Virus record (IMG/VR): IMGVR_UViG_3300023296_000874
Coordinates: 1-64,000 of that record
Reading direction: 5' to 3' (one strand)
Length of the DNA: 64,000 bases
Part shown: piece after piece, positions 14,813 through 62,064 of the stretch
How the letters are laid out: every line of letters starts with the position of its first letter
Position numbering within the stretch: the stretch's first letter is position 1
Program-made: the position numbers and the translations under genes
The notes under the pieces: model-generated
Database searches by the model: none
What the model saw: the letters and a program-made list of their open reading frames with translations, nothing else
Told to the model about the DNA's origin: nothing

Positions 14813-14834
14813 GTAGCCTCCGTCATATCGTATC

Positions 14835-14862
14835 AACGGAGGCTACGGGCAAATAGTCAGAG
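14835..14862 (-). promoter_or_regulatory. putative phage promoter CTCTGAC-N17-CGTT inside 11-bp inverted repeat covering the SD
   Basis: GTAGCCTCCGT (14813-14823) / ACGGAGGCTAC (14836-14846) perfect inverted repeat. Confidence 0.75.
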
Positions 14863-14863
14863 C

Positions 14864-15292
14864 TCAGTCTTCCTTGTCCTTGATCGCCTTGATGAGGTCT
14901 TTGGCGTCGTACACAGGGATGCCATTCTCTTCGAGCTCTTCCTCTGCAAGAGCCTCCGCAATCATGGCCTCTTCGTCCACAGGCTCGAAGATCACGTCAA
15001 GCTTCACCCGCACTTGGTAGACGCCGGGCATGAGGCTTTCATTGGCGAGGTAGGCAGTCTCTTCGTCGGCATCAACCCACAACGCAGTCAGAGCTGTCGC
15101 GCCGGACATCATCTGACGGAGAGTGGTACCCTCCATGAACTGTCCCTTGAAGGTGTAGCCGAGCTGTCCACGCTCGTGACCACCGATCACCTCTTCCTCT
15201 TCGTCCTCGTCGAGAATGGACTCTACGGCGGTGCGGAGAACGTACTTGGTCACACGATGGAACTGAGTCTTGATTAGATCTCGCAACTTCAT
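14864..15292 (-). CDS. acidic hypothetical protein
   Basis: 142-aa ORF, CCGGAG SD. Confidence 0.7.
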   Translation of the reverse strand: MKLRDLIKTQFHRVTKYVLRTAVESILDEDEEEEVIGGHERGQLGYTFKGQFMEGTTLRQMMSGATALTALWVDADEETAYLANESLMPGVYQVRVKLDVIFEPVDEEAMIAEALAEEELEENGIPVYDAKDLIKAIKDKED

Positions 15293-15400
15293 GAGTACTC
15301 CGGGGTTGGTGCTTACACACAGAAGAGTAGCCTCTGATCCTGCAGCCTCCGACCCGGAGATTCAATCAATGCGGGGTGTCCGCTCCCCGAGCCGTGCAGC

Positions 15401-15694
15401 TCAACCCGTCGCTTCATCAGCGGCAACCTGAGGCTGTGCTGACATGCGAATGGCATAAGCGGGACTGATGAAGGGGCTGAACCCCGTAAGGTCCGCCAGA
15501 TTGATGCCCGCTCCGGAGCCGGACGTGAAGATGCGCGGTGGCGGCTTGTTGGGGATGCCGGTCATGCTTGCACGCTCGTTGCTCTCCCACTCATCGAGAG
15601 CTTCCCACGCAGTCAGGAGGTCCCGTCCCTCGTCGGTATCCATCTCGAAGAACCGTTGTGCGCCCGCTCTGTAGGTGGCTTGGTAGACTGGCAT
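15401..15694 (-). CDS. hypothetical protein
   Basis: 97-aa ORF, GGAGAG SD. Confidence 0.65.
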   Translation of the reverse strand: MPVYQATYRAGAQRFFEMDTDEGRDLLTAWEALDEWESNERASMTGIPNKPPPRIFTSGSGAGINLADLTGFSPFISPAYAIRMSAQPQVAADEATG

Positions 15695-15795
15695 TAGCTC
15701 TCCATCGTTGGTGACTGTGTGTCGACCTACAACACCAGACGCTCATCTTCGCCCGTTTGTGCTGATGGAGTGATTTCTAAATGCTCAAGTTTATC

Positions 15796-15990: not shown

Positions 15991-16011
15991 GTGTGTCTCC
16001 GTTGTTCAGGC

Positions 16012-16039
16012 AACGTAACGAACAGCTTGATAGTCAGAG
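16012..16039 (-). promoter_or_regulatory. putative phage promoter CTCTGAC-N17-CGTT
   Basis: Motif in divergent intergenic gap upstream of ATG 15990. Confidence 0.7.
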
Positions 16040-20181: not shown

Positions 20182-20186
20182 TCACC

Positions 20187-25009: not shown

Positions 25010-25642
25010 CTACCGTGCCAGCCGCAACCACAGGCCTCGAAGCGAGCTTCGCGCCTTTGCAAACAACCTTCCGAAGAGTCCGGACCATGTGTCCTCCATG
25101 AGATAGTCGTATACCTCAACCATGCGATCGACATCAGTAAGTGCGTCGTGCGCTCCATCATTGGAAACGCCGTAGTAGGCGCACACATTCCTCAAGGACA
25201 CCGACTTCATGCCGTTGGTGGAGTCGAAATACGGTACCCAGGCCAGAGTCACAGTGTCAATCTTGTGGTAGTCCCCGGTCCACTCTACGCCCTCGTGCCG
25301 GTCCCACTCCTTCTCGAGCATTCCCCAGTCGAAGGTGATGTTGTGGGCTACGAAGATTGCACCGGCAGTCATCTCGCAGTACTCACGCATCGCCGTCTCG
25401 TGGCTGACAACGCCGTGCGCTTCCCAAGCCGCGTGCGTGTACCCATTGATCTCCAGCGCCTTGCTGTCGGCCTTGTCCGGCCACCGAGGGTGCATGAACC
25501 ACTCCTTGCGGTGGAGCTGTTCACCGGAGGGTGAGCGGACTACTACGCCGATGCTGATGATCTCATGCTCGACCGGATCGAGGCCCGTGGTTTCAGTGTC
25601 TGTGAATGCAAGGTTGCGGTCCCGTGCAGCGATGTACGCCAT
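25010..25642 (-). CDS. DEDDh 3'-5' exonuclease (DnaQ-like)
   Basis: FTDTETTGLDP, EIISIG, VAHNITFD, HDALTDV. Confidence 0.9.
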   Translation of the reverse strand: MAYIAARDRNLAFTDTETTGLDPVEHEIISIGVVVRSPSGEQLHRKEWFMHPRWPDKADSKALEINGYTHAAWEAHGVVSHETAMREYCEMTAGAIFVAHNITFDWGMLEKEWDRHEGVEWTGDYHKIDTVTLAWVPYFDSTNGMKSVSLRNVCAYYGVSNDGAHDALTDVDRMVEVYDYLMEDTWSGLFGRLFAKARSSLRGLWLRLAR

Positions 25643-25649
25643 GTGTGTG

Positions 25650-25673
25650 TCCTCTTTGTTGTTTGAAAGAGGA
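25650..25673 (-). promoter_or_regulatory. 8-bp stem-loop occluding the exonuclease SD
   Basis: TCCTCTTT-N8-AAAGAGGA; 3' arm on minus strand is the SD of ATG 25642. Confidence 0.55.
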
Positions 25674-25703
25674 ACATGGAGTTTCAGCCGACCGCAGCGA
25701 TTC

Positions 25704-26174: not shown

Positions 26175-26521
26175 CGGGGTTTCCTCCTAAAACGCTGTCC
26201 GGCCCAGGTTCAGGTCCCAGAAATGGAGGAAAAGGCAGCGGGTGGAAAGTCAGACCCACAGCGACGAAACCTCACCGGAAAACCCATGAGGTTTGTACAT
26301 CACATGCCGAAGCACACGCTTTCCGGCACCTATACAGATGTATGAATATGGAACGGCCTGCGAGCGGATGTGACCTCTGATTAGTCATTCCAGAGGTCAT
26401 GTGCCGCGCCGATTGTAGCCGGTTCGTCGGGGAAGGACGGACCACGAACGCAGAAGCCGCTCCGTCCACCAGTGCAGGTGGGTTTCGGAGCGGCTTCTTG
26501 GGTATTTTGGGTTTTCCCGGT

Positions 26522-27140: not shown

Positions 27141-27913
27141 CGGTTCTCTTCCGTTCGCAGGGTGTACTTGGAGTTGTAGGTGTCCTCAGCCTTCACCGTG
27201 ATGCAGTCCACCTCCGCGCCCGTCTCATCAACGATCACGGCGCAGAGCCACCCACCAAATGCACACGCCAGGTCGATGCCCGTTGCGTACACGTCGCGGA
27301 TAGGCTCAGGCTGCTTGTACGGCTGGTGGCCGTAGTACACATGTCCGAGGTAGCCGTCGTAGTTGATGGCCCAGAACTCCAGGCCCGGCTTCATGCTGAA
27401 CGTGCTGCCCACCATCTTGCCCGTTTCCGAGTCGATGTAGCGCACAAACCAGAGCTGGTTGTACTTGCCCTGACGCTTGCGGGAGTAGCCGTCGATGTCC
27501 CCTTGCGGAGGCAGGAAGGTCACGTCACGCGGCAGTCCGGCATGAACAACGAGCACGTTGCCCGGCAGCTTGATGTAGTGCGGGAAGGCAGCCATCCAGT
27601 CCTGGTCCTCTGTGGAGAGGGCAGCGGAGATGGTCGTGATCTCTTGGGAGTTGTGCTCGGGTGCCGGGCGTCCGTGCGCCACTTCCTGACGTCCTCGCCG
27701 AACGTGCCGAACATGCTTGTGGTCGTGGTTGCCCATGACGCACTCAGCTCCAAGGGAGCGGGCCAGCTTCACAACAGCGGGGCTGTCGGGGCCACGGTCT
27801 ACGAGGTCACCTGCGAACACGATCCGGCAGCCCTTGGGCAGCAGAGTGAGCAGAGTCTCGAGTTCGGCGATACATCCGTGGACGTCGCCAATGATTGCAG
27901 TGAGTTGTCCCAT
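27137..27913 (-). CDS. calcineurin-like metallophosphoesterase (second copy)
   Basis: GDVHG, GDLVDRGPDS, GNHD, VHAG, YGHQP, IDLACAFGG. Confidence 0.9.
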   Translation of the reverse strand: MGQLTAIIGDVHGCIAELETLLTLLPKGCRIVFAGDLVDRGPDSPAVVKLARSLGAECVMGNHDHKHVRHVRRGRQEVAHGRPAPEHNSQEITTISAALSTEDQDWMAAFPHYIKLPGNVLVVHAGLPRDVTFLPPQGDIDGYSRKRQGKYNQLWFVRYIDSETGKMVGSTFSMKPGLEFWAINYDGYLGHVYYGHQPYKQPEPIRDVYATGIDLACAFGGWLCAVIVDETGAEVDCITVKAEDTYNSKYTLRTEENR

Positions 27914-27921
27914 GTGTCTCT

Positions 27922-27949
27922 AACGCTCCGAGCTGGTCGGAAGTTAGAG
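27922..27949 (-). promoter_or_regulatory. putative phage promoter CTCTAAC-N17-CGTT, palindromic, possibly leaderless
   Basis: CTCTAAC/GTTAGAG and TCCGA/TCGGA inverted repeats; CGTT ends 8 nt before ATG 27913. Confidence 0.7.
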
Positions 27950-32768: not shown

Positions 32769-32796
32769 AACGCCTTTCGTAGCGTGAAAGTCAGAG
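32769..32796 (-). promoter_or_regulatory. putative phage promoter CTCTGAC-N17-CGTT
   Basis: Motif overlapping upstream stop codon. Confidence 0.7.
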
Positions 32797-34279: not shown

Positions 34280-35467
34280 CTACACGGAGAGTTCTGGGCG
34301 CTCACCCTCGGGGATCGCCCTCCAGTGCCTCTTGATGGTAGCTACCAGCGCCGAGTCGTCGAAGTTGGTGTACTTCTCAGGGTAGTCGGCGGCGAGCTTG
34401 TGGAGCCTACCGAGGTACTCAACGGTCTGGTCGTAGAGCTTCCGCGCGGGCGGGCGCTCCCACAGCACGGAGATCTTGCGACGCTCTGCCTCAGAGGTGT
34501 CACCCTCGTCCACCATATCCTCGAGCCGGTCGTACTCCTCGTCGGTGATGATGCGGTTGCCGTCCGCGTCCTCAAGGTCGTGGTCGTAGGCCGTCTCGAC
34601 ATCCACCTCATCGCTCAGGCGGATGAGGCGTGTGGCACCCACAAGGAAGGATGCGTCGTCCTCCTGCCACCCGTGACACTCCTCGTGCTCACCGCTGTTG
34701 CCGATGGGCATGGGTGGCATGGTCATGTCGGTCCAGTCGTAGAACTGCACGAAGTAGGGTCCGCCCCAATGGCATCCTTCAGCCGCAATCATGGTGCCGT
34801 CCTTGTTGGGCGTAGCGTTCACCCAGCAGAAGCCGCCACCGAAGTAGGCTTCGGAAGGGCTGAAGCTGTACTTCTCGTGCGTTGCGAGGTTGATGGACGT
34901 CTGTCCCATGTAGCTCTCGCCGCTGAGCAGCCAGTTCCCATCCTCGCGGTACACCCACTCATGCCACAGGCTCGAGTAGTTCCGGCGCACCTCGTTGACG
35001 TAGAGCCACGTCCCGAGTGCCATCTTGAACACGGTGCCCTTGGTGTAGGCCCAGCATCCGGGCGTGGTCTTGTGGCTGGTGATGACAATCTTGTAGGCAC
35101 CGTCCGGGCTCAGTACCTCCTTGGGGTCATCCGAGGCGTTGGCATCGCTGAAGTAGAAGTCGTTCCACGCGGCGTCGTACTTCTCCTTCTCGTCCTTGCT
35201 GACGATCAGGGTCCAGAGCTCCTTCAGGCTGTCACGCCAAGGGCTTCCGCTACGTGCGGCAGATGCAGCCTCGTACTCCACCCGGCGAGGGTCGTCCTCG
35301 GGGAGGCTGCTGCTGTTGGTGATGCCATTGTCGAAGATGGCAGAGCGAGCGGTGTTGAAGCGCTCGTACTTGGCTTGCGCGTCTGCTCGGCTCTCGAGCT
35401 TGTGCTTGTGGTACTGAGCCAGTGGAAGGCTCATCTTGAAGTCAAAGTGCGGGGTCAGGTTGTCCAT
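34280..35467 (-). CDS. hypothetical protein (395 aa)
   Basis: Long ORF with coding-type codon usage; ACTACGGAG SD. Confidence 0.8.
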   Translation of the reverse strand: MDNLTPHFDFKMSLPLAQYHKHKLESRADAQAKYERFNTARSAIFDNGITNSSSLPEDDPRRVEYEAASAARSGSPWRDSLKELWTLIVSKDEKEKYDAAWNDFYFSDANASDDPKEVLSPDGAYKIVITSHKTTPGCWAYTKGTVFKMALGTWLYVNEVRRNYSSLWHEWVYREDGNWLLSGESYMGQTSINLATHEKYSFSPSEAYFGGGFCWVNATPNKDGTMIAAEGCHWGGPYFVQFYDWTDMTMPPMPIGNSGEHEECHGWQEDDASFLVGATRLIRLSDEVDVETAYDHDLEDADGNRIITDEEYDRLEDMVDEGDTSEAERRKISVLWERPPARKLYDQTVEYLGRLHKLAADYPEKYTNFDDSALVATIKRHWRAIPEGERPELSV

Positions 35468-35550
35468 TAGGATCTCCGTAGTTGGTTGAGTGTTCTCAGC
35501 GTTTTTCGGGTGGAGATCCTCGGGAGGGTCTCGAGCTTAGGTGTGGGGCA

Positions 35551-35847: not shown

Positions 35848-36236
35848 GATGTGCTCCCGTACTTGCGCTGAAGGGTGGCGAGCTGGCTACGCTCACGGCG
35901 CTCCTCGGCTTTCTTCTGGTCAGCCGCACGCTGCTCCCTCTCCTCTTGTGCCTTGCGCTCACGGGCCTCTCTCGCGACGTGAGCACGCTGCATGTCGTGG
36001 TCGAGCAGGTCAGCGATGCTGATGTACTCGGTACGGGTCTCGGGTCCACAACAGGAGCACTGGTACTCCTGAGTGGTCAGCGTGGCTCCACCCTCGTCAA
36101 TCTCGTCGATGTCCCAATAGGCAGGGAACTCACTGTCGACGTCGTGGCGTGTGCGGGTGTAGCTCTGGATGAGAGTGTCGAGATCGGAGGCGGCTTGGAA
36201 CATCGCCTCGAGCTGGGCTTCGGTGTGGATGCTCAC
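35844..36236 (-). CDS. hypothetical protein with CxCC and charged C-terminal helix
   Basis: GTG 36236 in GTGA overlap after GGAGG. Confidence 0.7.
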   Translation of the reverse strand: MSIHTEAQLEAMFQAASDLDTLIQSYTRTRHDVDSEFPAYWDIDEIDEGGATLTTQEYQCSCCGPETRTEYISIADLLDHDMQRAHVAREARERKAQEEREQRAADQKKAEERRERSQLATLQRKYGSTS

Positions 36237-36871
36237 TTCGCACCTCCACTCAGAGCCTGCCGAATGGCCTGGCTGTCGAGATCCTCTTCGAGGAGCATCT
36301 CGAGGCGCTGCATGTTGCCGGGGTTGCCGAGGATCGCGTTGGCGGCTGCTGCCGCTCCAGTACCACAAGCCTCGTTCAACCGGCCACGGAGGGCGTACTC
36401 ATCGTCGCACCCGTCGAGCAACTCCTCGAGCTTGGCGCTCTTCATGGAGGCACGGGCAAGCTGAGCTGCGGTACGTCCGAAGGCTTGGCGCACTTGCTCA
36501 CGGATGAGCTCGCGCATCTCGGTCTTGATCCACTGTTCGTTCGCGATCGTGCTCAAGGAACCCCACCGGCTACCGATCTCTCGGGTCAGCTTGTCCTTGG
36601 CAGCCTTTTCGGCATCCTTCGTGGCTTGGGAGATCGCGTCGGTGGTGGCGGTGTTGATCCGCTTGGTGGCTTCGGCAACGGCCTCCGTGCGGAGGGTGCG
36701 AAGCTCGGAGCGCGCCTCGGAGCTCTCAGCGAGGGTTTCGTTGCGGTAGTCCGCACCGATGTCCTTCTTGAGTTCGTCCCAGAACTGGCGGCTCTTACAG
36801 AGGTTGGCAGAGATGTCGGCGGCAGCGAGAGTTTCGATCTTGTCGCTGTCGAGGGTGAAGTTGGCGTCCAT
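36233..36871 (-). CDS. helical coiled-coil protein with QRLEMLLEED tag near C-terminus
   Basis: 212-aa ORF. Confidence 0.75.
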   Translation of the reverse strand: MDANFTLDSDKIETLAAADISANLCKSRQFWDELKKDIGADYRNETLAESSEARSELRTLRTEAVAEATKRINTATTDAISQATKDAEKAAKDKLTREIGSRWGSLSTIANEQWIKTEMRELIREQVRQAFGRTAAQLARASMKSAKLEELLDGCDDEYALRGRLNEACGTGAAAAANAILGNPGNMQRLEMLLEEDLDSQAIRQALSGGAK

Positions 36872-36951
36872 TTTGAAGTATCCGTAGTAGTGAGTGAAGG
36901 TGTAGCTTGTGAAAACTGCACGATCCTCTACGGAGGCTTCTTGTGGGGTCC

Positions 36952-36975
36952 TTACGTCTCTGCGATCCGGGTCAT
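36952..36975 (-). other. 7-codon upstream mini-ORF MTRIAET
   Basis: AAGAGG SD, ATG 36975, TAA 36952; lies between promoter motif and ATG 36871. Confidence 0.45.
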
Positions 36976-37002
36976 TGGTCTGCCTCTTGTTGTGTCCCCT
37001 CT

Positions 37003-37030
37003 AACGGGGAGCGGCACTCAGAAGTTAGAG
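37003..37030 (-). promoter_or_regulatory. putative phage promoter CTCTAAC-N17-CGTT, palindromic
   Basis: CCTCTAAC/GTTAGAGG inverted repeat spans the motif. Confidence 0.7.
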
Positions 37031-40055: not shown

Positions 40056-40937
40056 TCAGTCGTTCTCCACTACGTTGAGCCTGCCCAGCGCAGCCTTCTT
40101 CTTACCCTCTTCGAGGATCCGCGCCTTTTCGATGTTGGCGGGAGCTGCGTAGCAGTAGGTGCAGGCGTGTGGGCAGGCAAGTGATGTCTGGGTAGCTACC
40201 TCAATGGCGGCTGAGCAACGGCAGTCGTCAACCTTGGGGTGCATCAGCCCCAGGTTGTCTATACCATAGATCTGGTCGATCCAGTAGGCGTTGACACACG
40301 TAGCCGGTCCAAAGTTGTCCGCAACTCCCCTGAAGGAGTCGTCGTCCCAGCACCCGAGGAGCATCATGTCGTGCTTGTCGAGGATGGCGCACATCTGCCG
40401 CAAGATCTCCCGGCGCTCGTTTTCGTCACGGGTCTCGGGGATCGCGGTCTCGCTGTGGAGGAAGCTGAAGTAGCACTCCCGCACGCCCAGGTCGGCCATG
40501 AATTGAGCCACCCGCTCGAACTCGCTCCAGTCAGCAGGCACGGGGGAGTAGCGCCACTGCATCTTCTCGACGCCGTACTCTGCCACCATGTCAGCGAAGC
40601 ACTGGAGCTGAATGTCCAGCGCAGGCACCTTGAGCTCGGTGGAGGGGTCGCCGCAGATGGTCATCGCAAAGAACTGTCGGTAGTTCGCGTCCAGCTCGGC
40701 GCGTCGTGGGTTCTTGAGGAAGCGTCGGTAGTCCTTGGAGTACCAGAACAGGGAGTGCATGTCCTCGGGAGCGAGGCTCCACCGTGCGGGCATCCCAGTC
40801 TGAGGGTGTGGCGCGTCGATGTACCCACGGTCCAACCACCGGAAGAATCGCTTCATCCAGAAGGCGGGGATGTCGGTGTTGCGGCTCAAAGTGATGGGGA
40901 ATCCCCACTCGAGCGGCTTCAGGATTTCGGTTGACAT
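40056..40937 (-). CDS. DUF1848-like protein (radical-SAM/photolyase-related)
   Basis: ITLSRNTDIPAF, FWYSKD, QWRYSP, CPHACTYCYA. Confidence 0.8.
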   Translation of the reverse strand: MSTEILKPLEWGFPITLSRNTDIPAFWMKRFFRWLDRGYIDAPHPQTGMPARWSLAPEDMHSLFWYSKDYRRFLKNPRRAELDANYRQFFAMTICGDPSTELKVPALDIQLQCFADMVAEYGVEKMQWRYSPVPADWSEFERVAQFMADLGVRECYFSFLHSETAIPETRDENERREILRQMCAILDKHDMMLLGCWDDDSFRGVADNFGPATCVNAYWIDQIYGIDNLGLMHPKVDDCRCSAAIEVATQTSLACPHACTYCYAAPANIEKARILEEGKKKAALGRLNVVEND

Positions 40938-40959: not shown

Positions 40960-40987
40960 AACGTACCCAAGGGGGAGGTACTCAGAG
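40960..40987 (-). promoter_or_regulatory. putative phage promoter CTCTGAG-N17-CGTT
   Basis: Motif upstream of ATG 40937; TACCTC/GAGGTA inverted repeat. Confidence 0.7.
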
Positions 40988-43228: not shown

Positions 43229-43295
43229 TGTTGGTCCTCTTTCAGTCAAAAGACAAAGCTGGACCAAGAAAGGGCGAGGAGTTCGAAACCCTCAC

Positions 43296-43691
43296 CTACG
43301 CTTCAAGAAGCAGCTCGATCCGGTCCACGTCAGTTTCGTTCCACGGGTTGATGTCCACGTCTTGAATCAGACGCCACCTACGCGGAGGCCAGTTGGTGGC
43401 GACACGTCCATAGTCGCAGCCACCTTCATCGTTGCGCTCAAACGTGTAGATGTTCCGGGCGGTTACGCACGCTCCAGTCCGATAGGACCCAGAGGGAGCC
43501 ACGTGAGTCACAATGCCGTAGCCTTCACCGTATCCGGTCCCCATGAACCACATCTGTCCGGGGCGGGGTAGGTCGGTGAACTCAGGAGCGCGGGAGCAGA
43601 GCTCGAACCTCTCTTGAGGCATGGCGTCCCGGTGCTTGTTGCAGAACACACAGGTCCAATCTGTCGATCGGATGTGGTGGGGTCCTCTCAT
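43296..43691 (-). CDS. hypothetical protein with terminal DRIELLLEA tag
   Basis: CxxC...C then SH3-like region; ATGA coupling. Confidence 0.7.
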   Translation of the reverse strand: MRGPHHIRSTDWTCVFCNKHRDAMPQERFELCSRAPEFTDLPRPGQMWFMGTGYGEGYGIVTHVAPSGSYRTGACVTARNIYTFERNDEGGCDYGRVATNWPPRRWRLIQDVDINPWNETDVDRIELLLEA

Positions 43692-50581: not shown

Positions 50582-51000
50582 ACTCCAATCTCCAGGTATG
50601 GGTTCTGAGGATCATTCGTGTTGGTGATGGCGATGATGCCGTCCAAATCTCTGAAAATGGTAGCCATCACTTCGTCGTAGGTGTTCCGGTTGATGATCTG
50701 GTCCCTGTGCTTGAGGCACTGACCCTCCGCGAGGAGGATGTCAGGGGTGTACCGCTCCATGGTGGAGGGCCTCCTGTCCAAGACGAGGAGCAGCCTCTTG
50801 TCCTCGTTGTTCGCCAGTTCGCGCCACCGAAGCAGGTACGCTGACCGGACCTGGTACATGGACAGCAACGAGGTCATTTCGACGTTGAGGTCTGCCCTTG
50901 CAGCCTCGGTAGCTGCAAGGGTTTGCATGGCTCCTTCTGACACCCCCTCTTCCGGAGGGGGGTCAATCTCAAGTAGGAGGTGAAGCCTATCGAGAGCCAC
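50578..51000 (-). CDS. hypothetical protein with N-terminal DRLHLLLEID tag
   Basis: Likely GTG start at 51000 overlapping prs end; ATGA coupling at 50578. Confidence 0.65.
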   Translation of the reverse strand: MALDRLHLLLEIDPPPEEGVSEGAMQTLAATEAARADLNVEMTSLLSMYQVRSAYLLRWRELANNEDKRLLLVLDRRPSTMERYTPDILLAEGQCLKHRDQIINRNTYDEVMATIFRDLDGIIAITNTNDPQNPYLEIGV

Positions 51001-51973
51001 CCCAGCCTCGCGGGAGGTGGTGAAGCACGGAGTCCACCAACACCGGAGCGCATCGCATGATGCGGAAGATGCCGGAGGTGCCTGGCTTGTCAAGGGTGTT
51101 CACCATCTTCACGGCGCGCGGGTGGCTGTCAAAGGAGTACACCGCGTCGAGTACGCCGTCGAACATGGCGTGCGTGTCGGCGGGGCTCTTGGTGTAGACG
51201 CCGTGGCTCAGGATCGCGCTGACGCCAATGGCACCCGCGTCCATGTAGCTCTTCGCTCCACCCACGAGGCTGCTACCGCTCCGGGTCATGTCGTCCACGA
51301 GGATCACGTACTTGCCCTTGACGTCGGCGCTGACGTTGGTCACCTCGGTGGTCCCGCCGTCGATGCGTCGCTTGCCGATGAAGGCCGGGAGCCAGCCACC
51401 CATCTCGGAGGCGATGTACTCCACACGCTTCGCACCACCGGCATCAGCGGAGCCAATCACGGCATCAGCGACGCCCTGCTCAGCCACGATCTCGCGGATC
51501 GCGTCGAGGATGATCGGCTGTCCACGAGAGTGGATCTGGTGGGCTCGGTCTCCGAAGTAGTGGGGGATGCCCTCTGCATGGAGATCGAGGAACACGATCC
51601 GGTTGCCGTTGTAGGCCTCGGGGATGGCGCTGAGCAGCCGGGCGCGCGTCTTGGCAGTCACCACCTCACGCGTCTTGGGCTTGGCGCGCTCCATGGTGCT
51701 GTACCCGAAGTAGGGGATCACGATGGTCAGAGAGCGAGCTCCGTAGGCCACAATCGCGCAGCAAGCGTCGAACATCTCCATCGTGTCGTTGTCGTTGATG
51801 GTGCCGCCGAGGTACACCACGTCACGGTCACGCACTGAGGTTTCGATGCGCTGGTACCGCTCCCCGTCAGGGAAGGTCTTGATCAGCACCTCGCCCCGGT
51901 CGAAGCAGGGGTCTACGTCAACAAACGTAGGGGCGAGGTACTCGTAGCTTCGGGTAGCAAAGAGAAGAGGCAC
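50987..51973 (-). CDS. prs: ribose-phosphate pyrophosphokinase family protein
   Basis: FPDGE, VIPYFGYS, DLH, SADAGGAKR, VDDMTRSGSS, SHGV. Confidence 0.9.
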   Translation of the reverse strand: MPLLFATRSYEYLAPTFVDVDPCFDRGEVLIKTFPDGERYQRIETSVRDRDVVYLGGTINDNDTMEMFDACCAIVAYGARSLTIVIPYFGYSTMERAKPKTREVVTAKTRARLLSAIPEAYNGNRIVFLDLHAEGIPHYFGDRAHQIHSRGQPIILDAIREIVAEQGVADAVIGSADAGGAKRVEYIASEMGGWLPAFIGKRRIDGGTTEVTNVSADVKGKYVILVDDMTRSGSSLVGGAKSYMDAGAIGVSAILSHGVYTKSPADTHAMFDGVLDAVYSFDSHPRAVKMVNTLDKPGTSGIFRIMRCAPVLVDSVLHHLPRGWGGSR

Positions 51974-51986
51974 GTTGGTTCTCCTT

Positions 51987-53174
51987 TTAGAGGACGCTCT
52001 CTACGATACGAACGTAGAGGTCATCCAGCTTGTCCATGTCGGGGCTGTAAGGTAGCACGGGAGTGAGCTCGGGAAGGGGCTCGAGGCCCTTCTTCACCCG
52101 CGCAGTCACACGCTGCTTCTCGGTACCGTAGTACGATGTGTAGATGTCACCGAGAGCGGCGTTCTCGCGATCAGCCCAGTCCACCAACTCGTCGTAGGTC
52201 CAGGCACCCTTGCGGATAGCGAGGAGCTCTTCACGGTCGATCCCGCCGCGCCACACATGCACCTTGCCCGTCGTCAAGATCTCCCGTCCCATGCGGAGCA
52301 GGCGAACGAGGTGGGCACCGTGCTTGGTGTCGTAGCCGGAGGCAGCTTCCAGCGCAGCCCGCTTGGGGTTCCGCTGACGCTTCCAGGTCTCGAAGCTCTT
52401 CCAGTTCTTTTGGGCGTCCTTGTACCGCTTCTCACCCTTGAGGGCCTCGAGCAGTCCTTCGTCGATCCCGATGGAGCGTGCGGCAGCAATCCACAGTTCA
52501 TCGTCGGTGGTCACGCCGATGGTGGCGAGGGTCTCAGCGATGTTGTCCTTGGCGCGGATCTTCTCGCTGTCGGCCATTTCGCCGAAGTCCCACTTCCACT
52601 CGTCAAGCTGCTTGTCGATGGCGGCGAGGAGCACGTTGCGCTGATGCTGCGTCACCACTTCCTCACCGAGGCCAAACTCCTCGCGGGTCGGCTTGTGGGT
52701 CGGAGGGTTGAGCAACCAGGCCCGGTGTCCCTTGATGCGCTTGAGCTGCTGGAAGGCGTAGCCGGTGAAGCGGTGCTTGGCGGCTCCACTCAGGAAGAGG
52801 TCCCGGTGTTCGCGGAGCAACTGCCCGGCCCAGTTGTGCATGAGCAGCTCTTCGTCGCGGCAGAAGAGCACGTCGAGCATTCCGGGGTTGCAGTCGGCGG
52901 TCAGCTTCATGAACTTGCCGAGGCCGTACACGACGCCCTCGAGCTTCTCGCGTTCGGCGGCGTCCATCTGCTCGGCGTCGAGGTACTTGCGGAAGGGTTC
53001 CATCTGCCCAGGCTTGTCGCACTGGTCGAAACGCTTGCGGAAGGTCAAGTGGTACGGACGTGGAGGTAGGCAGACGCCCTTGAGGTCTACGTCCGAAGTG
53101 TCGGTGTGGAGCCCGTAAGCTCGGGAACCAGCCACTCCAACGAGGATCGCAGAGTCATGTAGGTCGAAATCCAT
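51987..53174 (-). CDS. predicted nucleotidyltransferase (Pol-beta superfamily, PF10127-like)
   Basis: GSRAYGLHTDTSDVDLKGV, NPGMLDVLF, GYDTKHGAHLVRLL. Confidence 0.85.
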   Translation of the reverse strand: MDFDLHDSAILVGVAGSRAYGLHTDTSDVDLKGVCLPPRPYHLTFRKRFDQCDKPGQMEPFRKYLDAEQMDAAEREKLEGVVYGLGKFMKLTADCNPGMLDVLFCRDEELLMHNWAGQLLREHRDLFLSGAAKHRFTGYAFQQLKRIKGHRAWLLNPPTHKPTREEFGLGEEVVTQHQRNVLLAAIDKQLDEWKWDFGEMADSEKIRAKDNIAETLATIGVTTDDELWIAAARSIGIDEGLLEALKGEKRYKDAQKNWKSFETWKRQRNPKRAALEAASGYDTKHGAHLVRLLRMGREILTTGKVHVWRGGIDREELLAIRKGAWTYDELVDWADRENAALGDIYTSYYGTEKQRVTARVKKGLEPLPELTPVLPYSPDMDKLDDLYVRIVESVL

Positions 53175-53198: not shown

Positions 53199-53226
53199 AA
53201 CGCCACGAAGGCCCTGAAAGTCAGAT
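53199..53226 (-). promoter_or_regulatory. putative phage promoter ATCTGAC-N17-CGTT
   Basis: Motif upstream of ATG 53174; GGCCTTC can pair with SD GGAGGCC. Confidence 0.7.
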
Positions 53227-53769: not shown

Positions 53770-53797
53770 AACGTAGCGACAGGGGGAGATCTCAGAG
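53770..53797 (-). promoter_or_regulatory. putative phage promoter CTCTGAG-N17-CGTT
   Basis: Motif upstream of ATG 53748. Confidence 0.7.
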
Positions 53798-55007: not shown

Positions 55008-55028
55008 AGTGTCCTCCAGAGTCCTTCC

Positions 55029-55055
55029 AACACTTTTCGTCCTTGGAAGTTAGAG
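55029..55055 (-). promoter_or_regulatory. putative phage promoter variant CTCTAAC-N16-TGTT
   Basis: Variant of motif; CTTCCAA/TTGGAAG inverted repeat. Confidence 0.55.
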
Positions 55056-58813: not shown

Positions 58814-58816
58814 TGG

Positions 58817-60310
58817 TCACCTCATTGTCGGGAACAGAATCACGTCCCGAATTGATTGTGTGTCTGTCAACAGCATCACGAGCCGGTCGATGCCAATCCC
58901 CTCACCGGAGGTGGGAGGCATACCGAAGCTCAACGCGTCGATGTAGTCCTGGTCGAAGTACATGGCTTCATCGTCCCCGCGTGCCTTGGCAGCAGCCTGG
59001 GCCTGGAAACGAGCAGCCTGCTCAACGGGGTCGTTCAGCTCTTGGAAGCCGTTGGCGATTTCCATACCGGCGATGTAGAGCTCGAAGCGGTCTGCTACCT
59101 CTGGGTCATCAGCAGATGCTCGAGAGAGTGGGCTGATGTCCAAGGGGAATCCGGTCACGAAGGTCGGCTGGATCAGCTTGTCCTCAACGTACTCGTCGAA
59201 GTAGAGCTGGAACCACCGCCCGATGGTCCGGGGGAGCTTGGTAGCGTCCGGGTGGTCCTGTACCCACCTCGAGCGCATCTCGGGCATGGAGAAGGGGTCG
59301 TTGATGCCCGCGTGCTCCATGATCAGGTCGGCCATGCTCACGCGCCTGAAGGTGGTCAGGTCAAGCTCGTGCCCGTCGTAGGTGCAGACGTCCATCGGAA
59401 GGAACTCGCCAACCCGGCAGGCTTCCTCGTAGATGACGCGGTTGTTGGCACCACGGATGATGGCTTCGGTGGTGTCCATCAGGTCAGCCGGTGTGGCGTG
59501 GGCCTGATAGAACTCCAGCATGGTGAACTCGGGGTTGTGCGTCCCGTCCACTCCCTCGTTCCGGAAGTTGCGGTTCAGCTCGAACACTCGCTCGTAGCCA
59601 CCCACGATGAGCCTCTTGAGGTAGAGCTCAGGGGCGATGCGTAGGTAGAGGTCCTTGTCGAGAGCGTTGTGGTGCGTCACGAATGGTCGTGCGTTCGCAC
59701 CGCCTGGGAGCGTCTGCATCATCGGCGTCTCCACCTCCATGAACCGATGGTCTTCAAAGTACCTCCGGATGTAGGATACGATGGTGCTGCGCGCACGGAA
59801 CCGGTCGCGAGTGTCTTGGCTCACGATGAGGTCGAGGTACCGCTGACGGCGCTGCTGCTCCACGTCGGTGAACCCCGCGTGCTTGTCCGGCAGGCTCTTG
59901 ATGCACTTGGAGTAGAGCGCAAGGCTGTCCACCTTGAGGCTCAGGTCACCGCGTCGGGTACGGATGAGCTGCGCTTCTGCGTACACCCAGTCGCCGATGT
60001 CCAACTTCTTCCACACGTCGGCGTACATGACGGGGCCGATGCCCGCACGGCGCACGAACAACTGCATCCGGCTTTCGCCATCCTCGATGAAGGCGAAGCC
60101 AATCTTGCCCATCTCGTTCTTCTGGACGATGCGTCCGGCCACACGGTAGACGGTGGTCTGCGCCTCCAACTCCTCCGCGCTCAGATCAGCACCGATGCGC
60201 AAGATCTCGAGCAGCCGGTGGCTGAGGTCCTTGGAGACGGGATAGGGATCTACGCCTTCAGCGCGTAGTGCGTCCAACTTTTCCAGCCGTGCTGGTTCAA
60301 ATTCGCTCAC
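58817..60310 (-). CDS. lysS: class II lysine--tRNA ligase
   Basis: N-terminal OB anticodon-binding domain; YLRIAPELYLKRL, FRNEG...HNPEFTMLEFY, GMPPTSGEGIGIDRLVMLLT. Confidence 0.95.
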   Translation of the reverse strand: MSEFEPARLEKLDALRAEGVDPYPVSKDLSHRLLEILRIGADLSAEELEAQTTVYRVAGRIVQKNEMGKIGFAFIEDGESRMQLFVRRAGIGPVMYADVWKKLDIGDWVYAEAQLIRTRRGDLSLKVDSLALYSKCIKSLPDKHAGFTDVEQQRRQRYLDLIVSQDTRDRFRARSTIVSYIRRYFEDHRFMEVETPMMQTLPGGANARPFVTHHNALDKDLYLRIAPELYLKRLIVGGYERVFELNRNFRNEGVDGTHNPEFTMLEFYQAHATPADLMDTTEAIIRGANNRVIYEEACRVGEFLPMDVCTYDGHELDLTTFRRVSMADLIMEHAGINDPFSMPEMRSRWVQDHPDATKLPRTIGRWFQLYFDEYVEDKLIQPTFVTGFPLDISPLSRASADDPEVADRFELYIAGMEIANGFQELNDPVEQAARFQAQAAAKARGDDEAMYFDQDYIDALSFGMPPTSGEGIGIDRLVMLLTDTQSIRDVILFPTMR

Positions 60311-60436
60311 GGAGCCCTCCGTAGGTCTGCATTACCCCTGGGACGGGGACAGAGTGTTATTCGTGCGAACCCTATCTCAGTCGAGCAGTAGACTGATCAC
60401 AGTAGTCTCTTCGCCATTCGAGTGTGATGTGTGGCA

Positions 60437-62008
60437 TTAGGCTGCCGCAGCCACCGCTTCCGCGCGGGCTCGGGTACACGTCTCGATCAAGCTCAGGGTG
60501 ATGCCGTCCACGGCGGGTCGGTGTTCGAAGCCGTCACGTCGCGCCGAGTCACCGGGTCCGTACACACGCCAGCCCTTCGGGAGGTTGCCGTACTGACACA
60601 CCATCGTAGCGGGTCCGTGTGAGGGGTGAGCAGCGTTCTCGCGCACGGCGAGTACCGGGATGCCGGGGAGGCTCTGCTTCCCGCTCCAACCCTCTTCCAG
60701 CTCATCGCCGAACTTCATGGTCGGTCCGTACTTGGACGTCCAGGCGAGCTTGTAAACCATGCTCACCAAGCCACGTCGGTAGCCGGTGGGCTCCGGGCGG
60801 TCGATGAAGTAGCCGCCCGCGCCAAACAGCGTCACCTCTTCGGGGTAGTCAACCTCGATGCGGAGCGCCTCGTACCGTGCAACGTCCTTGTCGTCGATGC
60901 CGTCTTCAAATACCCACGGGCGGGGTCGGATGCCGCGTGCCTTGATCTCGCTCACGATGTAGCGGAACTGCTCCTCAAGGGAGCCGCTGTCGGGTCGCAT
61001 CCCGTCGTTCCGGTCCGGAAACTCTTCCATGAGCTTCAGGGCGGTCGGGATGCCCACCTTCATCGTGTCGTTGGTGTCGAGCAGCATGATCACGAGGGGC
61101 ATTGCGGCGATGTGTGCGCGGAAGGCGCGTTCGTCGTTGCCACCGTGGCGCATGATGCCCTCATGGCCCAGCGTGCCAACTGCCTTGATGTCCAGCACGT
61201 AGGCACCGTAGGCGTTGGAGGTCAGCGTGAAGCCGAGGTCCTTCAGAGCCTTGAGCGCGATGAGGTGCTGCTCCATGCAGGTTGCGGCGCGGAGGCCAAC
61301 CTCGAAGATGCGGTTCGGGCTCACGCCGGAGGCCAGCATCTTGATGCCCTGCAACTGCACCGCGTTGTAGTAGCTGAGCTCGTCCACGGTGATGCCGTTT
61401 TCGATGTCCCGCAGCTCCTGTCGGAAGTCGGCATCGCCGAAGTCCCTGCCCTTGTGGGCACCGAGGATCGCCTCCATGGTGAGCTCCTTCTGGCGCTCAC
61501 AGGTCACGGTGCGGATGGTCTCGAGGAAGGCGGGCATCGTGTCGCCCTCGCGGGCCTTGATGTAGGCGGTCGCTACCTGCATCTGGTAGCTGAAGCGTCC
61601 CGAAACCAACGGCTCGAGCCAGCTTGCGATGGCCTGAGGAGCTCGCACGGTAGCCACGGGCTCACGGGGAGCAGCGTACTCGCCAAAGGGTGTCGCGTAG
61701 AGCACCTCAAGGCTGGAGCCGTCCACGGAGTCCCACAGCATCTTCTCGGTCACGTTGAAGCCGAAGTGCTGCAGTAGCGCGCACTCTTCCTTCACGGTCG
61801 CTGAGGTGGGGTTGGGGATCATCTCGCGGATCGCCGTCTCGGGATCCACAGGCATGAACATGAGCCCGCCGCGTCGGAAGCTCAGATAGAACACTTCCTT
61901 CTCTTCGGGGCGTCCGCCAGCCATCATGGGCCACTTGTAGCCGTCCGATCCGAGGGTGCTTTCGCGCCAGGATCGCTTGCCTGCAAGTAGTTGTCGTAGA
62001 ATGCTCAT
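60437..62008 (-). CDS. nicotinate/nicotinamide phosphoribosyltransferase family protein
   Basis: SDGYK, GTLGHE, LLDT, RPDSG, FEDG, FGAGG, VYKL. Confidence 0.8.
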   Translation of the reverse strand: MSILRQLLAGKRSWRESTLGSDGYKWPMMAGGRPEEKEVFYLSFRRGGLMFMPVDPETAIREMIPNPTSATVKEECALLQHFGFNVTEKMLWDSVDGSSLEVLYATPFGEYAAPREPVATVRAPQAIASWLEPLVSGRFSYQMQVATAYIKAREGDTMPAFLETIRTVTCERQKELTMEAILGAHKGRDFGDADFRQELRDIENGITVDELSYYNAVQLQGIKMLASGVSPNRIFEVGLRAATCMEQHLIALKALKDLGFTLTSNAYGAYVLDIKAVGTLGHEGIMRHGGNDERAFRAHIAAMPLVIMLLDTNDTMKVGIPTALKLMEEFPDRNDGMRPDSGSLEEQFRYIVSEIKARGIRPRPWVFEDGIDDKDVARYEALRIEVDYPEEVTLFGAGGYFIDRPEPTGYRRGLVSMVYKLAWTSKYGPTMKFGDELEEGWSGKQSLPGIPVLAVRENAAHPSHGPATMVCQYGNLPKGWRVYGPGDSARRDGFEHRPAVDGITLSLIETCTRARAEAVAAAA

Positions 62009-62036
62009 AATTCCTCGGGTGTCCAGTTACTCCATC

Positions 62037-62064
62037 AACGACGGATACCCCGAGGAAGTTAGAG
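62037..62064 (-). promoter_or_regulatory. putative phage promoter CTCTAAC-N17-CGTT with spacer pairing to the SD
   Basis: TTCCTCGGGT (62011-62020) versus ACCCCGAGGAA (62047-62057). Confidence 0.75.

What the first reader, a model, noticed from the sequence alone, without database searches (positions are those of the whole stretch)
14813..62057. Promoter spacers and leaders are complementary to the downstream ribosome-binding site: a built-in transcript-origin switch
Seen inverted repeats whose 3' arm is the SD region: 14813-14846 (11 bp perfect), 62011-62057 (10 bp with a bulge), 35469-35520 (AGGATCTCC/GGAGATCCT), 43231-43267 (TTGGTCC/GGACCAA), 26181-26231 (TTCCTCC/GGAGGAA), 25650-25673 (8 bp), 36881-36934 (7 bp). 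Shorter or G-U versions occur at 11188, 40960, 53199, 53770 and 55029. At the motif-bearing sites the 5' arm lies in or before the promoter. Established: T4 genes e, soc and I-TevI use this logic, where read-through early RNA hides the SD and local late RNA lacks the 5' arm. Inference: the design is applied systematically here, so genes are translated only when the local promoter fires.
Basis: partly seen in the sequence, partly recalled or inferred. Interest (0 to 1): 0.72.

Follow-up and report, generated by a model that had tools for sequence, protein, structure and literature searches.

The report
Phage promoters that hide the next ribosome site

Summary
The window is the first 64 kb of a 257.5-kb salt-lake myovirus contig with no close relatives.

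**The motif.** It is a bipartite promoter-like element, CTCTRAsT-N16-CGTTR-N7-TA, present in about 40 copies. Every copy points at the gene that follows. In four cases an ATG sits exactly at the predicted transcription start.

All the complementarities exist at the stated coordinates.
- Five fold better than shuffles: 14813, 25650, 35469, 36881 and 11188.
- 62011 qualifies only by its pairing with the Shine-Dalgarno (SD) site.
- Six are at chance level.

**Genome-wide tests.**
- 10 of 39 promoter-bearing genes have a perfect stem of at least 7 bp onto the SD, against 2.0 expected.
- 12 of 36 cost more to open than 95% of shuffles.
- Each gene's own promoter pairs with its SD better than swapped promoters do (p = 0.001).
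- Mean SD opening cost is 7.7 kcal/mol in long RNA, 3.8 in RNA from the predicted start and 5.4 in shuffled controls.
- The six promoters that head a transcription unit show no excess pairing.

**Verdict.** The T4-like logic is the best explanation for that third, but the design is not systematic. Three strong sites (25650, 35469, 36881) have no promoter between their arms. The local promoters are the non-structural class, so the effect is insulation rather than a late switch. There is no transcript evidence. This is a new member of a known kind.

The parts
14835..14862 (-). Class A promoter-like motif (CTCTGACT-N16-CGTT) upstream of the gene 14249-14812. Predicted transcription start is near 14826.
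   Evidence: PWM scan score 20.8. The stop codon of the upstream gene ends 1 nt before the motif.
14799..14858 (-). Hairpin of about 21 bp with a perfect 12-bp core, CGTAGCCTCCGT (14836-14847) paired with ACGGAGGCTACG (14812-14823). The 5' side lies in the promoter spacer and the CGT of the -10 box. The 3' side covers the SD GGAGG, the GUG start (14810-14812) and the first codons.
   Evidence: MFE -32.1 kcal/mol, z -7.4. SD opening cost is 23.5 (long RNA), 5.7 (from predicted start) and 6.4+-2.3 (shuffled) kcal/mol. The gene's own promoter ranks 1 of 36. A population variant, 14822 G>A on the + strand, turns a C-G pair into U-G and keeps the pair.
62037..62064 (-). Class A promoter (CTCTAACT-N16-CGTT) upstream of the NAPRTase-like gene 60437-62008. 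Predicted start is near 62028.
   Evidence: PWM score 23.8. The gene's N-terminus is confirmed by a 60%-identical homolog that aligns from residue 3.
62004..62064 (-). Hairpin TTCCTCGGG(G) (spacer, 62047-62057) paired with CCCGAGGAA (62011-62019), extended over the AUG.
   Evidence: 9-bp perfect stem. SD opening cost is 12.6 long, 4.2 short and 5.7+-2.2 shuffled. Whole-fragment z is only -1.7.
11188..11215 (-). Class A promoter upstream of the gene 10667-11164.
   Evidence: PWM score 21.1.
11169..11209 (-). Spacer CUCUCU.UGC (11200-11209) pairs with GCA.GGAGAG (11169-11178, the SD). There is one G-U pair, and an inner hairpin spans the -10 box.
   Evidence: z -2.7. Opening cost is 14.6 long, 4.9 short and 8.5+-2.4 shuffled, with 0/60 shuffles reaching it.
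25639..25679 (-). Hairpin sequestering the SD (AAAGAGGA, 25650-25657) and the AUG (25640-25642) of a DnaQ-like exonuclease gene (25010-25642). No class A or class B promoter lies between the arms.
   Evidence: MFE -15.0, z -5.7. PHROG 192, DNA polymerase exonuclease subunit, E 1e-36.
35469..35520 (-). 9-bp stem AGGATCTCC / GGAGATCCT over the SD of the gene 34280-35467, with a 34-nt loop. No recognisable promoter lies between the arms.
   Evidence: z -3.8, 0/200.
36881..36934 (-). 7-bp stem TCCGTAG / CTACGGA near the start of the gene 36233-36871. Both arms lie downstream of the class A promoter at 37003-37030, so the local transcript also carries the hairpin.
   Evidence: z -3.4. Promoter position is, 131 nt from CGTT to the start codon.
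27922..27949 (-). Class A promoter whose ATG (27911-27913, a metallophosphatase gene) begins exactly 8 nt after CGTT, giving a predicted leaderless mRNA. The -35 box CTCTAAC is also complementary to GTTAGAG at the -10 box.
   Evidence: the Pfam match starts at residue 6. The same 8-nt spacing occurs at genome position 196131, at L021:7544 and at L004:4615.
40960..40987 (-). Class A promoter of the DUF1848 gene (40056-40937). Its ACCTCC/GGAGGT complementarity to the SD is not above chance.
   Evidence: Opening cost 8.7 against 7.5+-2.0 shuffled; z -1.2. The ortholog in the distant relative L003 has a significant equivalent.
53199..53226 (-). Class A promoter of the RlaP-like gene. Its SD pairing is at chance level.
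   Evidence: 7.3 against 6.0+-1.8; z +0.1.
53770..53797 (-). Class A promoter. Its SD pairing is at chance level.
   Evidence: 4.8 against 6.0; z +0.2.
55028..55055 (-). Weak class A-like motif (TGTT instead of CGTT, 15-nt spacer). Its SD pairing is at chance level.
   Evidence: PWM score 13.4; z -0.4.
43231..43267 (-). TTGGTCC / GGACCAA complementarity, not better than shuffles. The 5' arm is the T-rich tail of a terminator-like hairpin at 43273-43296.
   Evidence: z -0.65; terminator-like site.
26181..26231 (-). TTTCCTCC / GGAGGAAA, 8 bp with a 37-nt loop. The fold is not better than shuffles.
   Evidence: z -0.24.

Best explanation
**What it is.** The phage has about 40 copies of a bipartite promoter (class A): GAWAnnCTCTRAsT, a 16-nt spacer, CGTTR, then a transcription start about 8-9 nt further on at a conserved TA. 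These promoters sit in the 40-110-nt gaps of long same-strand arrays of non-structural genes.

**How it works.** At roughly one third of them, the spacer and the CGT of the -10 box are complementary to the Shine-Dalgarno (SD) region of the gene immediately downstream, and often to its start codon too. In the window this applies to the genes starting at 14812, 62008 and 11164.
- RNA that arrives from an upstream promoter contains both arms. It folds into a 7-21-bp helix that costs 10-23 kcal/mol to open, so 30S subunits cannot bind.
- RNA started at the local promoter begins inside the loop and lacks the 5' arm. Its ribosome site is open, costing 1-6 kcal/mol.
- Output of these genes would therefore depend on their own promoter and be insulated from read-through.

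**Shown.** The motif family and its geometry. The excess and the gene-specificity of SD pairing. The position of the 5' arms upstream of the predicted start.

**Inferred.** That the motif is a promoter with that start. That read-through occurs. That the helix blocks translation.

**Outside this explanation.** The hairpins at 25650, 35469 and 36881 look like ordinary constitutive ribosome-site hairpins. The six weakest listed sites are chance.
For: **The motif is a promoter-like family**
- Two invariant blocks sit at a fixed 16-nt spacing, and a conserved TA lies at position 35/36.
- About 40 copies exist, all co-oriented with the next gene. CGTT-to-start distance is mostly 19-28 nt.
- ATG falls exactly at position 36 in two own genes and two genes of relatives, which points to leaderless starts and so to the transcription start.

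**SD pairing is in excess**
- 10/39 genes have a perfect stem of at least 7 bp onto the SD window, against 2.0+-1.4 for shuffles. The peak is confined to -15..-10.
- Perfect stems of 13, 12, 9, 8 and 7 bp have their 5' arms at promoter positions 7-26.
- Mean opening cost is 7.67 long, 3.82 short and 5.43 shuffled (z = 7.2). 12/36 promoters lie beyond 95% of shuffles, where 1.8 would be expected.

**The pairing is gene-specific**
- A gene's own promoter against swapped promoters gives 0.527 against 0.412 pairing probability (z = 2.95, p = 0.0012). 12/36 own promoters rank in the top 4.

**Local RNAs are unstructured**
- RNAs from the predicted start are no more structured than shuffles.

**Context fits**
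- Promoters that head a unit, with opposite-strand genes upstream, show no excess: 0/6 against 12/30.
- Intrinsic terminators are not enriched, so read-through is plausible.
- The same architecture occurs at the DUF1848 ortholog of a 35%-GC relative: 9.0 against 5.1+-1.6, and 1.4 for the short RNA.
- The one natural variant inside a helix keeps the pair.

**Precedent**
- T4 genes e, soc, 49 and I-TevI (PMC3014915).
Against: - No transcript data exist: no RNA run was listed. Transcription start, read-through and translation effects are all predicted.
- No sigma factor or RNA polymerase was recognised in the 257 kb to account for the motif.
- Two thirds of class A promoters show no excess pairing.
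- The leaders are so short that any helix spanning the -10 box must land on the SD. The positional peak is therefore not independent proof that the SD is the target.
- Upstream promoters are mostly of the same class, so the benefit of blocking read-through translation is unclear.
- No close relatives exist for a covariation test.
- The 0/6 against 12/30 contrast is only p about 0.07.
Confidence: 0.5

Rival explanations
1. The helices serve the upstream transcript rather than translation of the downstream gene. They could be 3'-end stabilisers or boundaries of transcription units. One route is that blocking translation of the next gene lets Rho terminate read-through. On this view the helices overlap the SD only because the gaps are filled by promoter plus leader.
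For: - Gaps are 40-110 nt and almost entirely occupied by promoter and leader.
- Canonical intrinsic terminators are not enriched in the window, so another kind of boundary would be useful.
- Several helices extend well beyond the SD, into the -35 box and the first codons.
Against: - No T-run follows the helices.
- Loops are 8-29 nt, unlike terminators.
- 3' arms always contain the GGAG core.
- Helices that lie wholly upstream of the start are rare compared with those that straddle it (profile).
- The Rho variant still works through SD occlusion, so it extends the main explanation rather than replacing it.
Confidence: 0.17
2. The helices enforce translational coupling. In polycistronic RNA, a ribosome finishing the upstream gene melts the helix and frees the SD, so the downstream gene is translated only together with the upstream one.
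For: - Upstream stop codons lie close by. They end 1-20 nt before the -35 box, or are the TGA inside CTCTGAsT itself in 5 of 39 cases.
- At genome position 95754 the stop lies inside the helix.
Against: - At the strongest sites the core helix begins 13 or more nt after the stop. At 14862 the stop is at -4..-2 and the core at +15..+26. At 62064 the stop ends at -20.
- That distance is beyond what a terminating ribosome should unwind. This rests on general knowledge of ribosome footprints, not on a test here.
- Coupling does not explain why promoters at the head of a unit lack the helices while internal ones have them, any better than the main model does.
Confidence: 0.1
3. The motif is not a promoter, or its start lies upstream of the arms. 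The helices would then be constitutive translational attenuators present in every transcript, like those at 25650, 35469 and 36881.
For: - Three strong hairpins in the window have no promoter between their arms.
- Genes without the motif also show some excess of SD stems: 13/126 against 4.2.
- No cognate sigma factor or polymerase was found.
Against: - A fixed 16-nt non-conserved spacer between two invariant blocks, strict orientation and position, and ATG exactly at +1 in four cases all fit DNA recognition by a transcription factor.
- The excess is much stronger at motif-bearing genes (26% against 10%), with 5' arms confined to positions 7-26.
Confidence: 0.1
4. The complementarities are chance products of a C/T-rich promoter box (CTCT, CTC before CGTT) meeting purine-rich SDs.
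For: - Mismatched promoter/gene pairs already give 0.41 pairing probability.
Against: - A gene's own promoter beats swapped promoters (p = 0.0012).
- Stems of 13, 12, 9 and 8 bp extend into gene-specific flanks.
- Only about 0.07 stems of at least 9 bp would be expected among 36 genes, by a rough estimate from uniform base frequencies.
- 12/36 promoters lie beyond 95% of shuffles.
Confidence: 0.05

Closest known systems
Phage T4 genes e (lysozyme), soc, 49 and I-TevI: translation-initiation regions sequestered in long early/middle transcripts, with late promoters placed inside the structure (review PMC3014915; also mobE of phage Aeh1)
   Same: - A helix occludes the SD and/or the start codon in RNA that comes from upstream.
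- The local promoter lies in the DNA that encodes the 5' strand.
- Locally started RNA therefore lacks that strand and is translatable.
   Different: - The promoter here is a two-box, ECF-like element with the arm in its spacer, not the single TATAAATA late box.
- The local promoters belong to the non-structural class, so there is no evident early-to-late switch.
- About a dozen genes of one genome are affected, against four or five in T4.
- Nothing has been tested experimentally here.
ECF-type (group 4) sigma-factor promoters (-35 with AAC, 16-17-nt spacer, -10 with CGT)
   Same: - Two short boxes lie at a rigid spacing of about 16 nt.
- CGTT occupies the downstream box.
- TRAC/TRAG in the upstream box ends in AAC in some copies.
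- The start follows several nt after CGT.
- This comparison is made from general knowledge.
   Different: - Most copies have GAG or GAC rather than AAC in the -35 box.
- No Sigma70_r2, r4 or r4_2 domain was found in the 257 kb.
- The factor that reads the motif is unknown.
Structure-mediated translational coupling in polycistronic RNAs (MS2 coat/replicase, some ribosomal-protein operons)
   Same: The downstream SD is paired with an upstream segment in the polycistronic RNA.
   Different: - The 5' arm here lies in the untranslated gap, mostly beyond reach of a terminating ribosome.
- A promoter sits between the arms.

Membership tests
T4-type transcript-origin-dependent occlusion of the translation-initiation region | A stable RNA helix sequesters the SD and/or the start codon in the longer transcript | tested here: met
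   Predicted only. 12/36 class A promoters have SD opening costs beyond 95% of shuffles (9-23.5 kcal/mol). z is -7.4 at 14813. Stems of 7-13 perfect bp lie on the SD.
T4-type transcript-origin-dependent occlusion of the translation-initiation region | A promoter lies within the structure, so the local transcript starts after the 5' strand | tested here: inconclusive
   The motif is promoter-like, and the predicted start at position 36 is supported by a conserved TA and four leaderless ATGs. 5' arms lie at positions 7-26. No 5'-end mapping is available. The feature is not met at 25650, 35469 and 36881.
T4-type transcript-origin-dependent occlusion of the translation-initiation region | Transcripts from upstream promoters read through into the gene | not testable with these tools
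   The support is indirect. Gene arrays run on one strand, intrinsic terminators are not enriched, and promoters heading a unit lack the helices.
T4-type transcript-origin-dependent occlusion of the translation-initiation region | Long transcripts are translated much less than local ones | not testable with these tools
   This needs reporters, toeprinting or Ribo-seq. Only energy differences are available here: a mean of 7.7 against 3.8 kcal/mol, and up to 23.5 against 5.7.
T4-type transcript-origin-dependent occlusion of the translation-initiation region | The local promoter belongs to a later temporal class than the read-through transcripts | tested here: not met
   The local promoters are class A and drive non-structural genes. 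The structural (late) genes use a different motif, tCATAATCCnTTTGTAg. Nearest upstream promoters are mostly class A too.
Intrinsic (Rho-independent) terminator | A G+C-rich stem with a 3-8-nt loop followed by a T-run | tested here: not met
   Loops are 8-29 nt and no T-run follows the 3' arms. Terminator-like sites in the window are no more frequent than in shuffles.
Translational coupling by ribosome-melted helix | The 5' arm lies inside the upstream ORF or within reach of the terminating ribosome | tested here: inconclusive
   Core helices start 13 or more nt after the stop at 14862 and 62064. At 95754 and four other promoters the stop codon is the TGA of the -35 box, so outer pairs could be melted.
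ECF sigma-factor promoter | An AAC-containing -35 box and a CGT-containing -10 box 16-17 nt apart, read by a group 4 sigma factor | tested here: inconclusive
   The spacing and CGTT are met. AAC occurs in only a minority of copies. No sigma domain was found in the contig, which is 81% complete.
Known RNA families (Rfam) | A match at gathering score | tested here: not met
   There were no matches in the window.

The most novel reading that the evidence does not exclude
A phage-specific promoter family doubles as a set of translational insulators. The non-conserved spacer of a two-box promoter is used, gene by gene, to encode an anti-SD arm. In a genome almost without terminators, each of about a dozen genes is then translated only from its own transcript. 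That would also keep non-structural genes silent on late read-through RNA, for example at genome positions 76534, 95754 and 152093, which follow class B late units. The read-out factor would be a transcription factor that current profiles do not recognise.
Probability: 0.35. Interest if true: 0.65.

Novelty: new member of a known kind. Interest (0 to 1): 0.5.

Why it matters
If confirmed, the T4 device of placing a promoter inside a ribosome-site hairpin would be a recurrent design principle rather than a curiosity of a few T4 genes. It would be in use at a dozen genes of an unrelated, uncultivated jumbo phage that has compact one-strand gene arrays and few terminators.

It would also give a purely sequence-based way to predict which genes of such phages are insulated from read-through.

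Finally, it supplies two well-defined promoter classes, with a predicted start site, for a phage group whose transcription machinery is unknown.

Tried and rejected
**Searches for close relatives, to test covariation (all failed)**
- Megablast of 20 kb against INPHARED found nothing.
- IMG/VR searched by the NAPRTase gene found nothing.
- IMG/VR searched by the DUF6283 protein gave only domain-level hits in unrelated phages with no shared motifs.
- IMG/VR searched by the class B motif gave 58 single, chance-like hits.
- Other assemblies of the same phage are 99.99% identical.
- Contigs from four other salt-lake runs are more than 99% identical. They carry one informative variant, at 14822.

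**Distant relatives**
- Relatives at 48-60% protein identity (L003, L004, L020, L021) share the gene module and variants of both motifs. They offer too few promoters for a replicate test; 2 of 5 sites look similar.
- The ENA copies of P0004 had no DNA available.

**RNA evidence**
- No RNA run was listed.

**Transcription machinery**
- Pfam Sigma70_r2, r4 and r4_2, T7-type RNAP and the Rpb1/Rpb2 domains were not found in the contig. The control search for the T7-type family rang nowhere either, so that result is uninformative.

**Other scans**
- Sigma-70 promoters and intrinsic terminators are not enriched.
- Rfam and tRNA scans of the window found nothing.
- Functions of the hairpin-bearing genes are mostly unknown, so no rationale such as "toxic if made early" could be drawn.
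- Literature searches found no prior description of this motif or of a genome-wide version of the device.

**Ideas rejected**
- A DNA operator palindrome: the arms differ at every site.
- An RNase III site: only one helix reaches about 20 bp.

Full report
**Source and gene map**

The window is bases 1-64000 of a 257,533-bp IMG/VR virus record that CheckV rates 81% complete. It is about 60% G+C. Seventeen salt-lake metagenome runs hold it. From 4.9 kb onward nearly all genes in the window lie on the minus strand, abutting or separated by short gaps.

The window encodes auxiliary functions:
- an NAPRTase-like enzyme and a PRPP synthetase;
- a lysyl-tRNA-synthetase-like class II enzyme;
- a CoaBC-like DFP domain and RlaP;
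- an AAA ATPase and a metallophosphatase;
- DUF1848, DUF4419, and a DnaQ-like exonuclease.

Elsewhere the genome encodes a tail sheath and a baseplate wedge, so the phage is a jumbo myovirus. Nothing close to it exists in INPHARED or IMG/VR.

**The motif**

The intergenic listing shows a recurrent element on the gene strand: CTCTRAsT, sixteen non-conserved bases, then CGTTR.

A seed alignment of 25 copies and a position-weight scan of both strands gave the following:
- about 40 copies genome-wide, sixteen of them in the window;
- extra conservation of GAWA upstream and of a TA at positions 35/36, counting the first C of CTCT as 0;
- every good copy points at the next gene;
- CGTT lies mostly 19-28 nt before the start codon.

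In two genes of this genome (promoters at 27949 and 196131) and in two genes of distant relatives (L021:7544, the NAPRTase homolog, and L004:4615), an ATG begins exactly 8 nt after CGTT, at position 36. That is what leaderless mRNAs starting at the conserved TA would look like. I take position 36 as the transcription start. This is an inference, because no RNA run could be listed.

The two-box layout with a rigid spacer resembles ECF-sigma promoters. No sigma or RNA-polymerase domain was found in the contig.

A second motif, tCATAATCCnTTTGTAg, occurs about 22 times between 72 and 238 kb and never in the window. It precedes the tail-sheath and baseplate operons. It also occurs in the relative L020. 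I call it class B (late, structural) and the window's motif class A (non-structural).

**Checking the observation site by site**

Folding each fragment against 200 dinucleotide shuffles separates them.

| Site | z-score | Comment |
|---|---|---|
| 14813-14846 | -7.4 | -32.1 kcal/mol; a ~21-bp helix (14799-14858) covering GGAGG, GUG and the first codons |
| 25650-25673 | -5.7 | also pairs the AUG |
| 35469-35520 | -3.8 | |
| 36881-36934 | -3.4 | |
| 11188 | -2.7 | |
| 62011-62057 | -1.7 | but its SD is specifically occluded (see below) |
| 40960 | -1.2 | chance level |
| 43231 | -0.65 | chance level; 5' arm is the T-rich tail of a terminator-like hairpin |
| 55029 | -0.4 | chance level |
| 26181 | -0.24 | chance level |
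| 53199 | +0.1 | chance level |
| 53770 | +0.2 | chance level |

**Checking it as a class**

*Test 1, perfect stems.* I counted genes with a perfect Watson-Crick stem of at least 7 bp whose 3' arm covers at least 5 nt of the SD window (-14..-4).

| Gene group | Observed | Upstream part shuffled |
|---|---|---|
| Class A promoter genes | 10/39 | 2.0+-1.4 (max 7 in 300) |
| Intergenic gap, no class A promoter | 13/126 | 4.2+-2.0 |
| Tightly abutting genes | 6/158 | 4.5 |

In class A genes the hits are confined to target windows at -15 and -10 (9-10 hits, against 0-3 elsewhere). The stems are 13 bp (promoter at genome position 95754), 12 bp (14862), 9 bp (62064), 8 bp (76534) and 7 bp (177552, 121281, 152093, 180011, 180666). 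Their 5' arms lie almost always at promoter positions 7-26.

*Test 2, opening cost.* This is the ensemble free-energy cost of making the SD window single-stranded.
- It averages 7.67 kcal/mol in RNA that begins 30 nt before the -35 box.
- It averages 3.82 in RNA that begins at the predicted start.
- It averages 5.43 when the part upstream of the start is shuffled (z = 7.2).
- Twelve of 36 promoters exceed 95% of their shuffles, where 1.8 would be expected.
- In the window the values are 14862 (23.5, against 5.7 short), 11215 (14.6 against 4.9), 62064 (12.6 against 4.2) and, marginally, 26762.

*Test 3, promoter swapping.* Swapping promoter regions among the 36 genes keeps every shared motif.
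- The probability that the SD pairs with the region upstream of the start is 0.527 for a gene's own promoter and 0.412 for mismatched pairs.
- A derangement test gives z = 2.95, p = 0.0012.
- Twelve genes have their own promoter among the top four ranks.

The high baseline shows that any class A promoter is somewhat complementary to any SD. The excess shows gene-specific matching. With no relatives available, that matching is the only form of covariation that can be tested here.

*Short RNAs.* Folded from the predicted start, the short RNAs of the three window sites are no more structured than shuffles (z +0.6, +1.0, +0.6).

**What this means mechanistically**

Suppose class A is a promoter that starts at position 36. 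The local transcript then begins in the loop and lacks the 5' arm, while any transcript crossing the promoter from upstream has both arms and a closed ribosome site.

This is the arrangement documented for T4 genes e, soc, 49 and I-TevI. There the long transcripts are poorly translated, about 100-fold less for gene e. The late promoters lie in the DNA that encodes the 5' strand (PMC3014915).

Three further observations fit:
- The six class A promoters that head a transcription unit, with opposite-strand genes upstream, show no excess pairing. Twelve of the 30 internal ones do. By a hypergeometric calculation p is about 0.07, which is only suggestive.
- Intrinsic terminators and sigma-70-type promoters are not enriched in the window, so read-through along the one-strand arrays is plausible.
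- The DUF1848 ortholog of a 35%-GC relative (L003) has a class A-like promoter whose -10-proximal segment pairs with its SD. Opening cost is 9.0 against 5.1+-1.6 for shuffles, and 1.4 for the short RNA.

The only natural variant found inside a helix is 14822 G>A on the + strand, in one run. It changes a C-G pair to U-G and keeps the pair. This is a single event and weighs little.

- The design is not systematic. Two thirds of class A promoters are indistinguishable from shuffles, and half of the listed sites are chance.
- Three of the strongest listed hairpins do not fit the switch. 25650 and 35469 have no recognisable promoter between their arms. 36881 lies wholly downstream of its promoter at 37030, 131 nt from the start. 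These would be present in every transcript and look like constitutive attenuators.
- The temporal logic differs from T4. The local promoters are the non-structural class, and most upstream promoters are of the same class. The expected effect is insulation of a gene's translation from read-through, not a late switch.
- At genome positions 76534, 95754 and 152093, class A promoters with strong helices follow class B (late) units. There the helix would keep a non-structural gene silent on late RNA, which is the reverse of T4. Only 3 of 5 such cases show it, so this is not a rule.

**Rivals**

- *A role in the upstream transcript (3' end or Rho-dependent boundary).* This cannot be excluded. The gaps are so short that any helix spanning the -10 box must land on the SD. 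However, there are no T-runs, the loops are long, and the 3' arms always contain the GGAG core.
- *Translational coupling.* This is unlikely for the strongest sites, whose core helices start 13 or more nt after the upstream stop. In five promoters the stop codon is the TGA of the -35 box, and there the outer pairs could be melted.
- *The motif is not a promoter.* This would turn all the helices into constitutive attenuators. The geometry of the motif argues against it.
- *Pure chance.* This is refuted for the top third and accepted for the weak sites.

**Limits**

- No transcript data exist, no factor for the motif was found, and no relatives are close enough for covariation.
- Gene starts come from my own caller. 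They were checked by homolog or Pfam N-termini only for the genes starting at 14812, 62008 and 27913.
- Functions of most hairpin-bearing genes are unknown.

**Verdict**

This is a new instance of the T4-type device in which a promoter sits inside a ribosome-site hairpin. It is used at about a dozen genes of an uncultivated jumbo phage with a previously undescribed two-box promoter. Confidence in the mechanism for that subset is about 0.5.

Noticed in passing
Genome 72-238 kb (outside the window), e.g. G000:C1:156002, 128438, 209888, 226138; also L020 near 4000 and 5690: A second, compact promoter-like motif, tCATAATCCnTTTGTAg, occurs about 22 times, 12-70 nt before the start codon. It precedes the tail-sheath and baseplate operons and is conserved in a 52%-GC relative, so it is probably the late class. 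At starts 149994 and 215435 the bases right after it (TCTCCAGGG, TCTCCTGG) pair with the SD (CCCTGGAGA, CCAGGAGA), and the two arm pairs covary.
   Followed up: partly
Window 27911-27949; genome 196131; L021:7544; L004:4615: An ATG lies exactly 8 nt after CGTT with no usable SD. This predicts leaderless mRNAs from class A promoters, in phages ranging from 40% to 64% G+C.
   Followed up: partly
Window 27922-27949 and 37003-37030; genome 83494/83525, 83802/83833, 170521/170552: At these promoters the -35 box CTCTAAC is the reverse complement of GTTAGAG at the -10 box. The site therefore scores as a class A promoter on both strands and would form a 7-9-bp hairpin in read-through RNA. It could be a bidirectional promoter or another structural role.
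   Followed up: no
Class A motif positions 3-5, e.g. window 40982-40984, 32791-32793: Positions 3-5 of the -35 box are always TGA or TAA. In 5 of 39 promoters this triplet is the actual stop codon of the upstream gene, so gene end and promoter overlap.
   Followed up: partly
Genome 77200-77269 (minus strand): A class A promoter is followed at once by ATG-TAA, a GGGGCT-GAGA-AGCCCC hairpin and TTTTG, with the next gene 354 nt away. This could be a very short transcript, a small RNA or an attenuator.
   Followed up: no
Many gene starts, e.g. window 11164, 14812, 15990, 32745, 55442, 56542: The SD is often embedded in a longer shared word, (C)ACGGAG, whose AC does not extend the usual anti-SD pairing. 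Several leaders share GTAGCACGGAG or AGCACGGAGCAC, which suggests duplicated promoter-leader cassettes or an extra signal.
   Followed up: no
Window 50987-53174 and 60437-62008; genome 64-72 kb (L100/L101): There is a dense NAD-salvage and nucleotide module: an NAPRTase-like enzyme, PRPP synthetase, isochorismatase-like proteins and a NUDIX/NrtR-like regulator. Lysyl-tRNA synthetase, ClpP, a Band_7 protein and RlaP lie alongside. The module is syntenic with relatives of 35-64% G+C (L003, L020, L021).
   Followed up: partly
Window 36960-36990 (minus strand): A seven-codon mini-ORF (ATG ACC CGG ATC GCA GAG ACG TAA), preceded by AGAGG, lies in the 120-nt leader between the promoter at 37030 and the hairpin at 36881-36934.
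   Followed up: no
Window 60437-62008: The public gene call for this protein (P0001, 496 aa) starts 27 codons downstream of the start used here. Homologs align from residue 3 of the longer form, so the database start is probably too short.
   Followed up: yes
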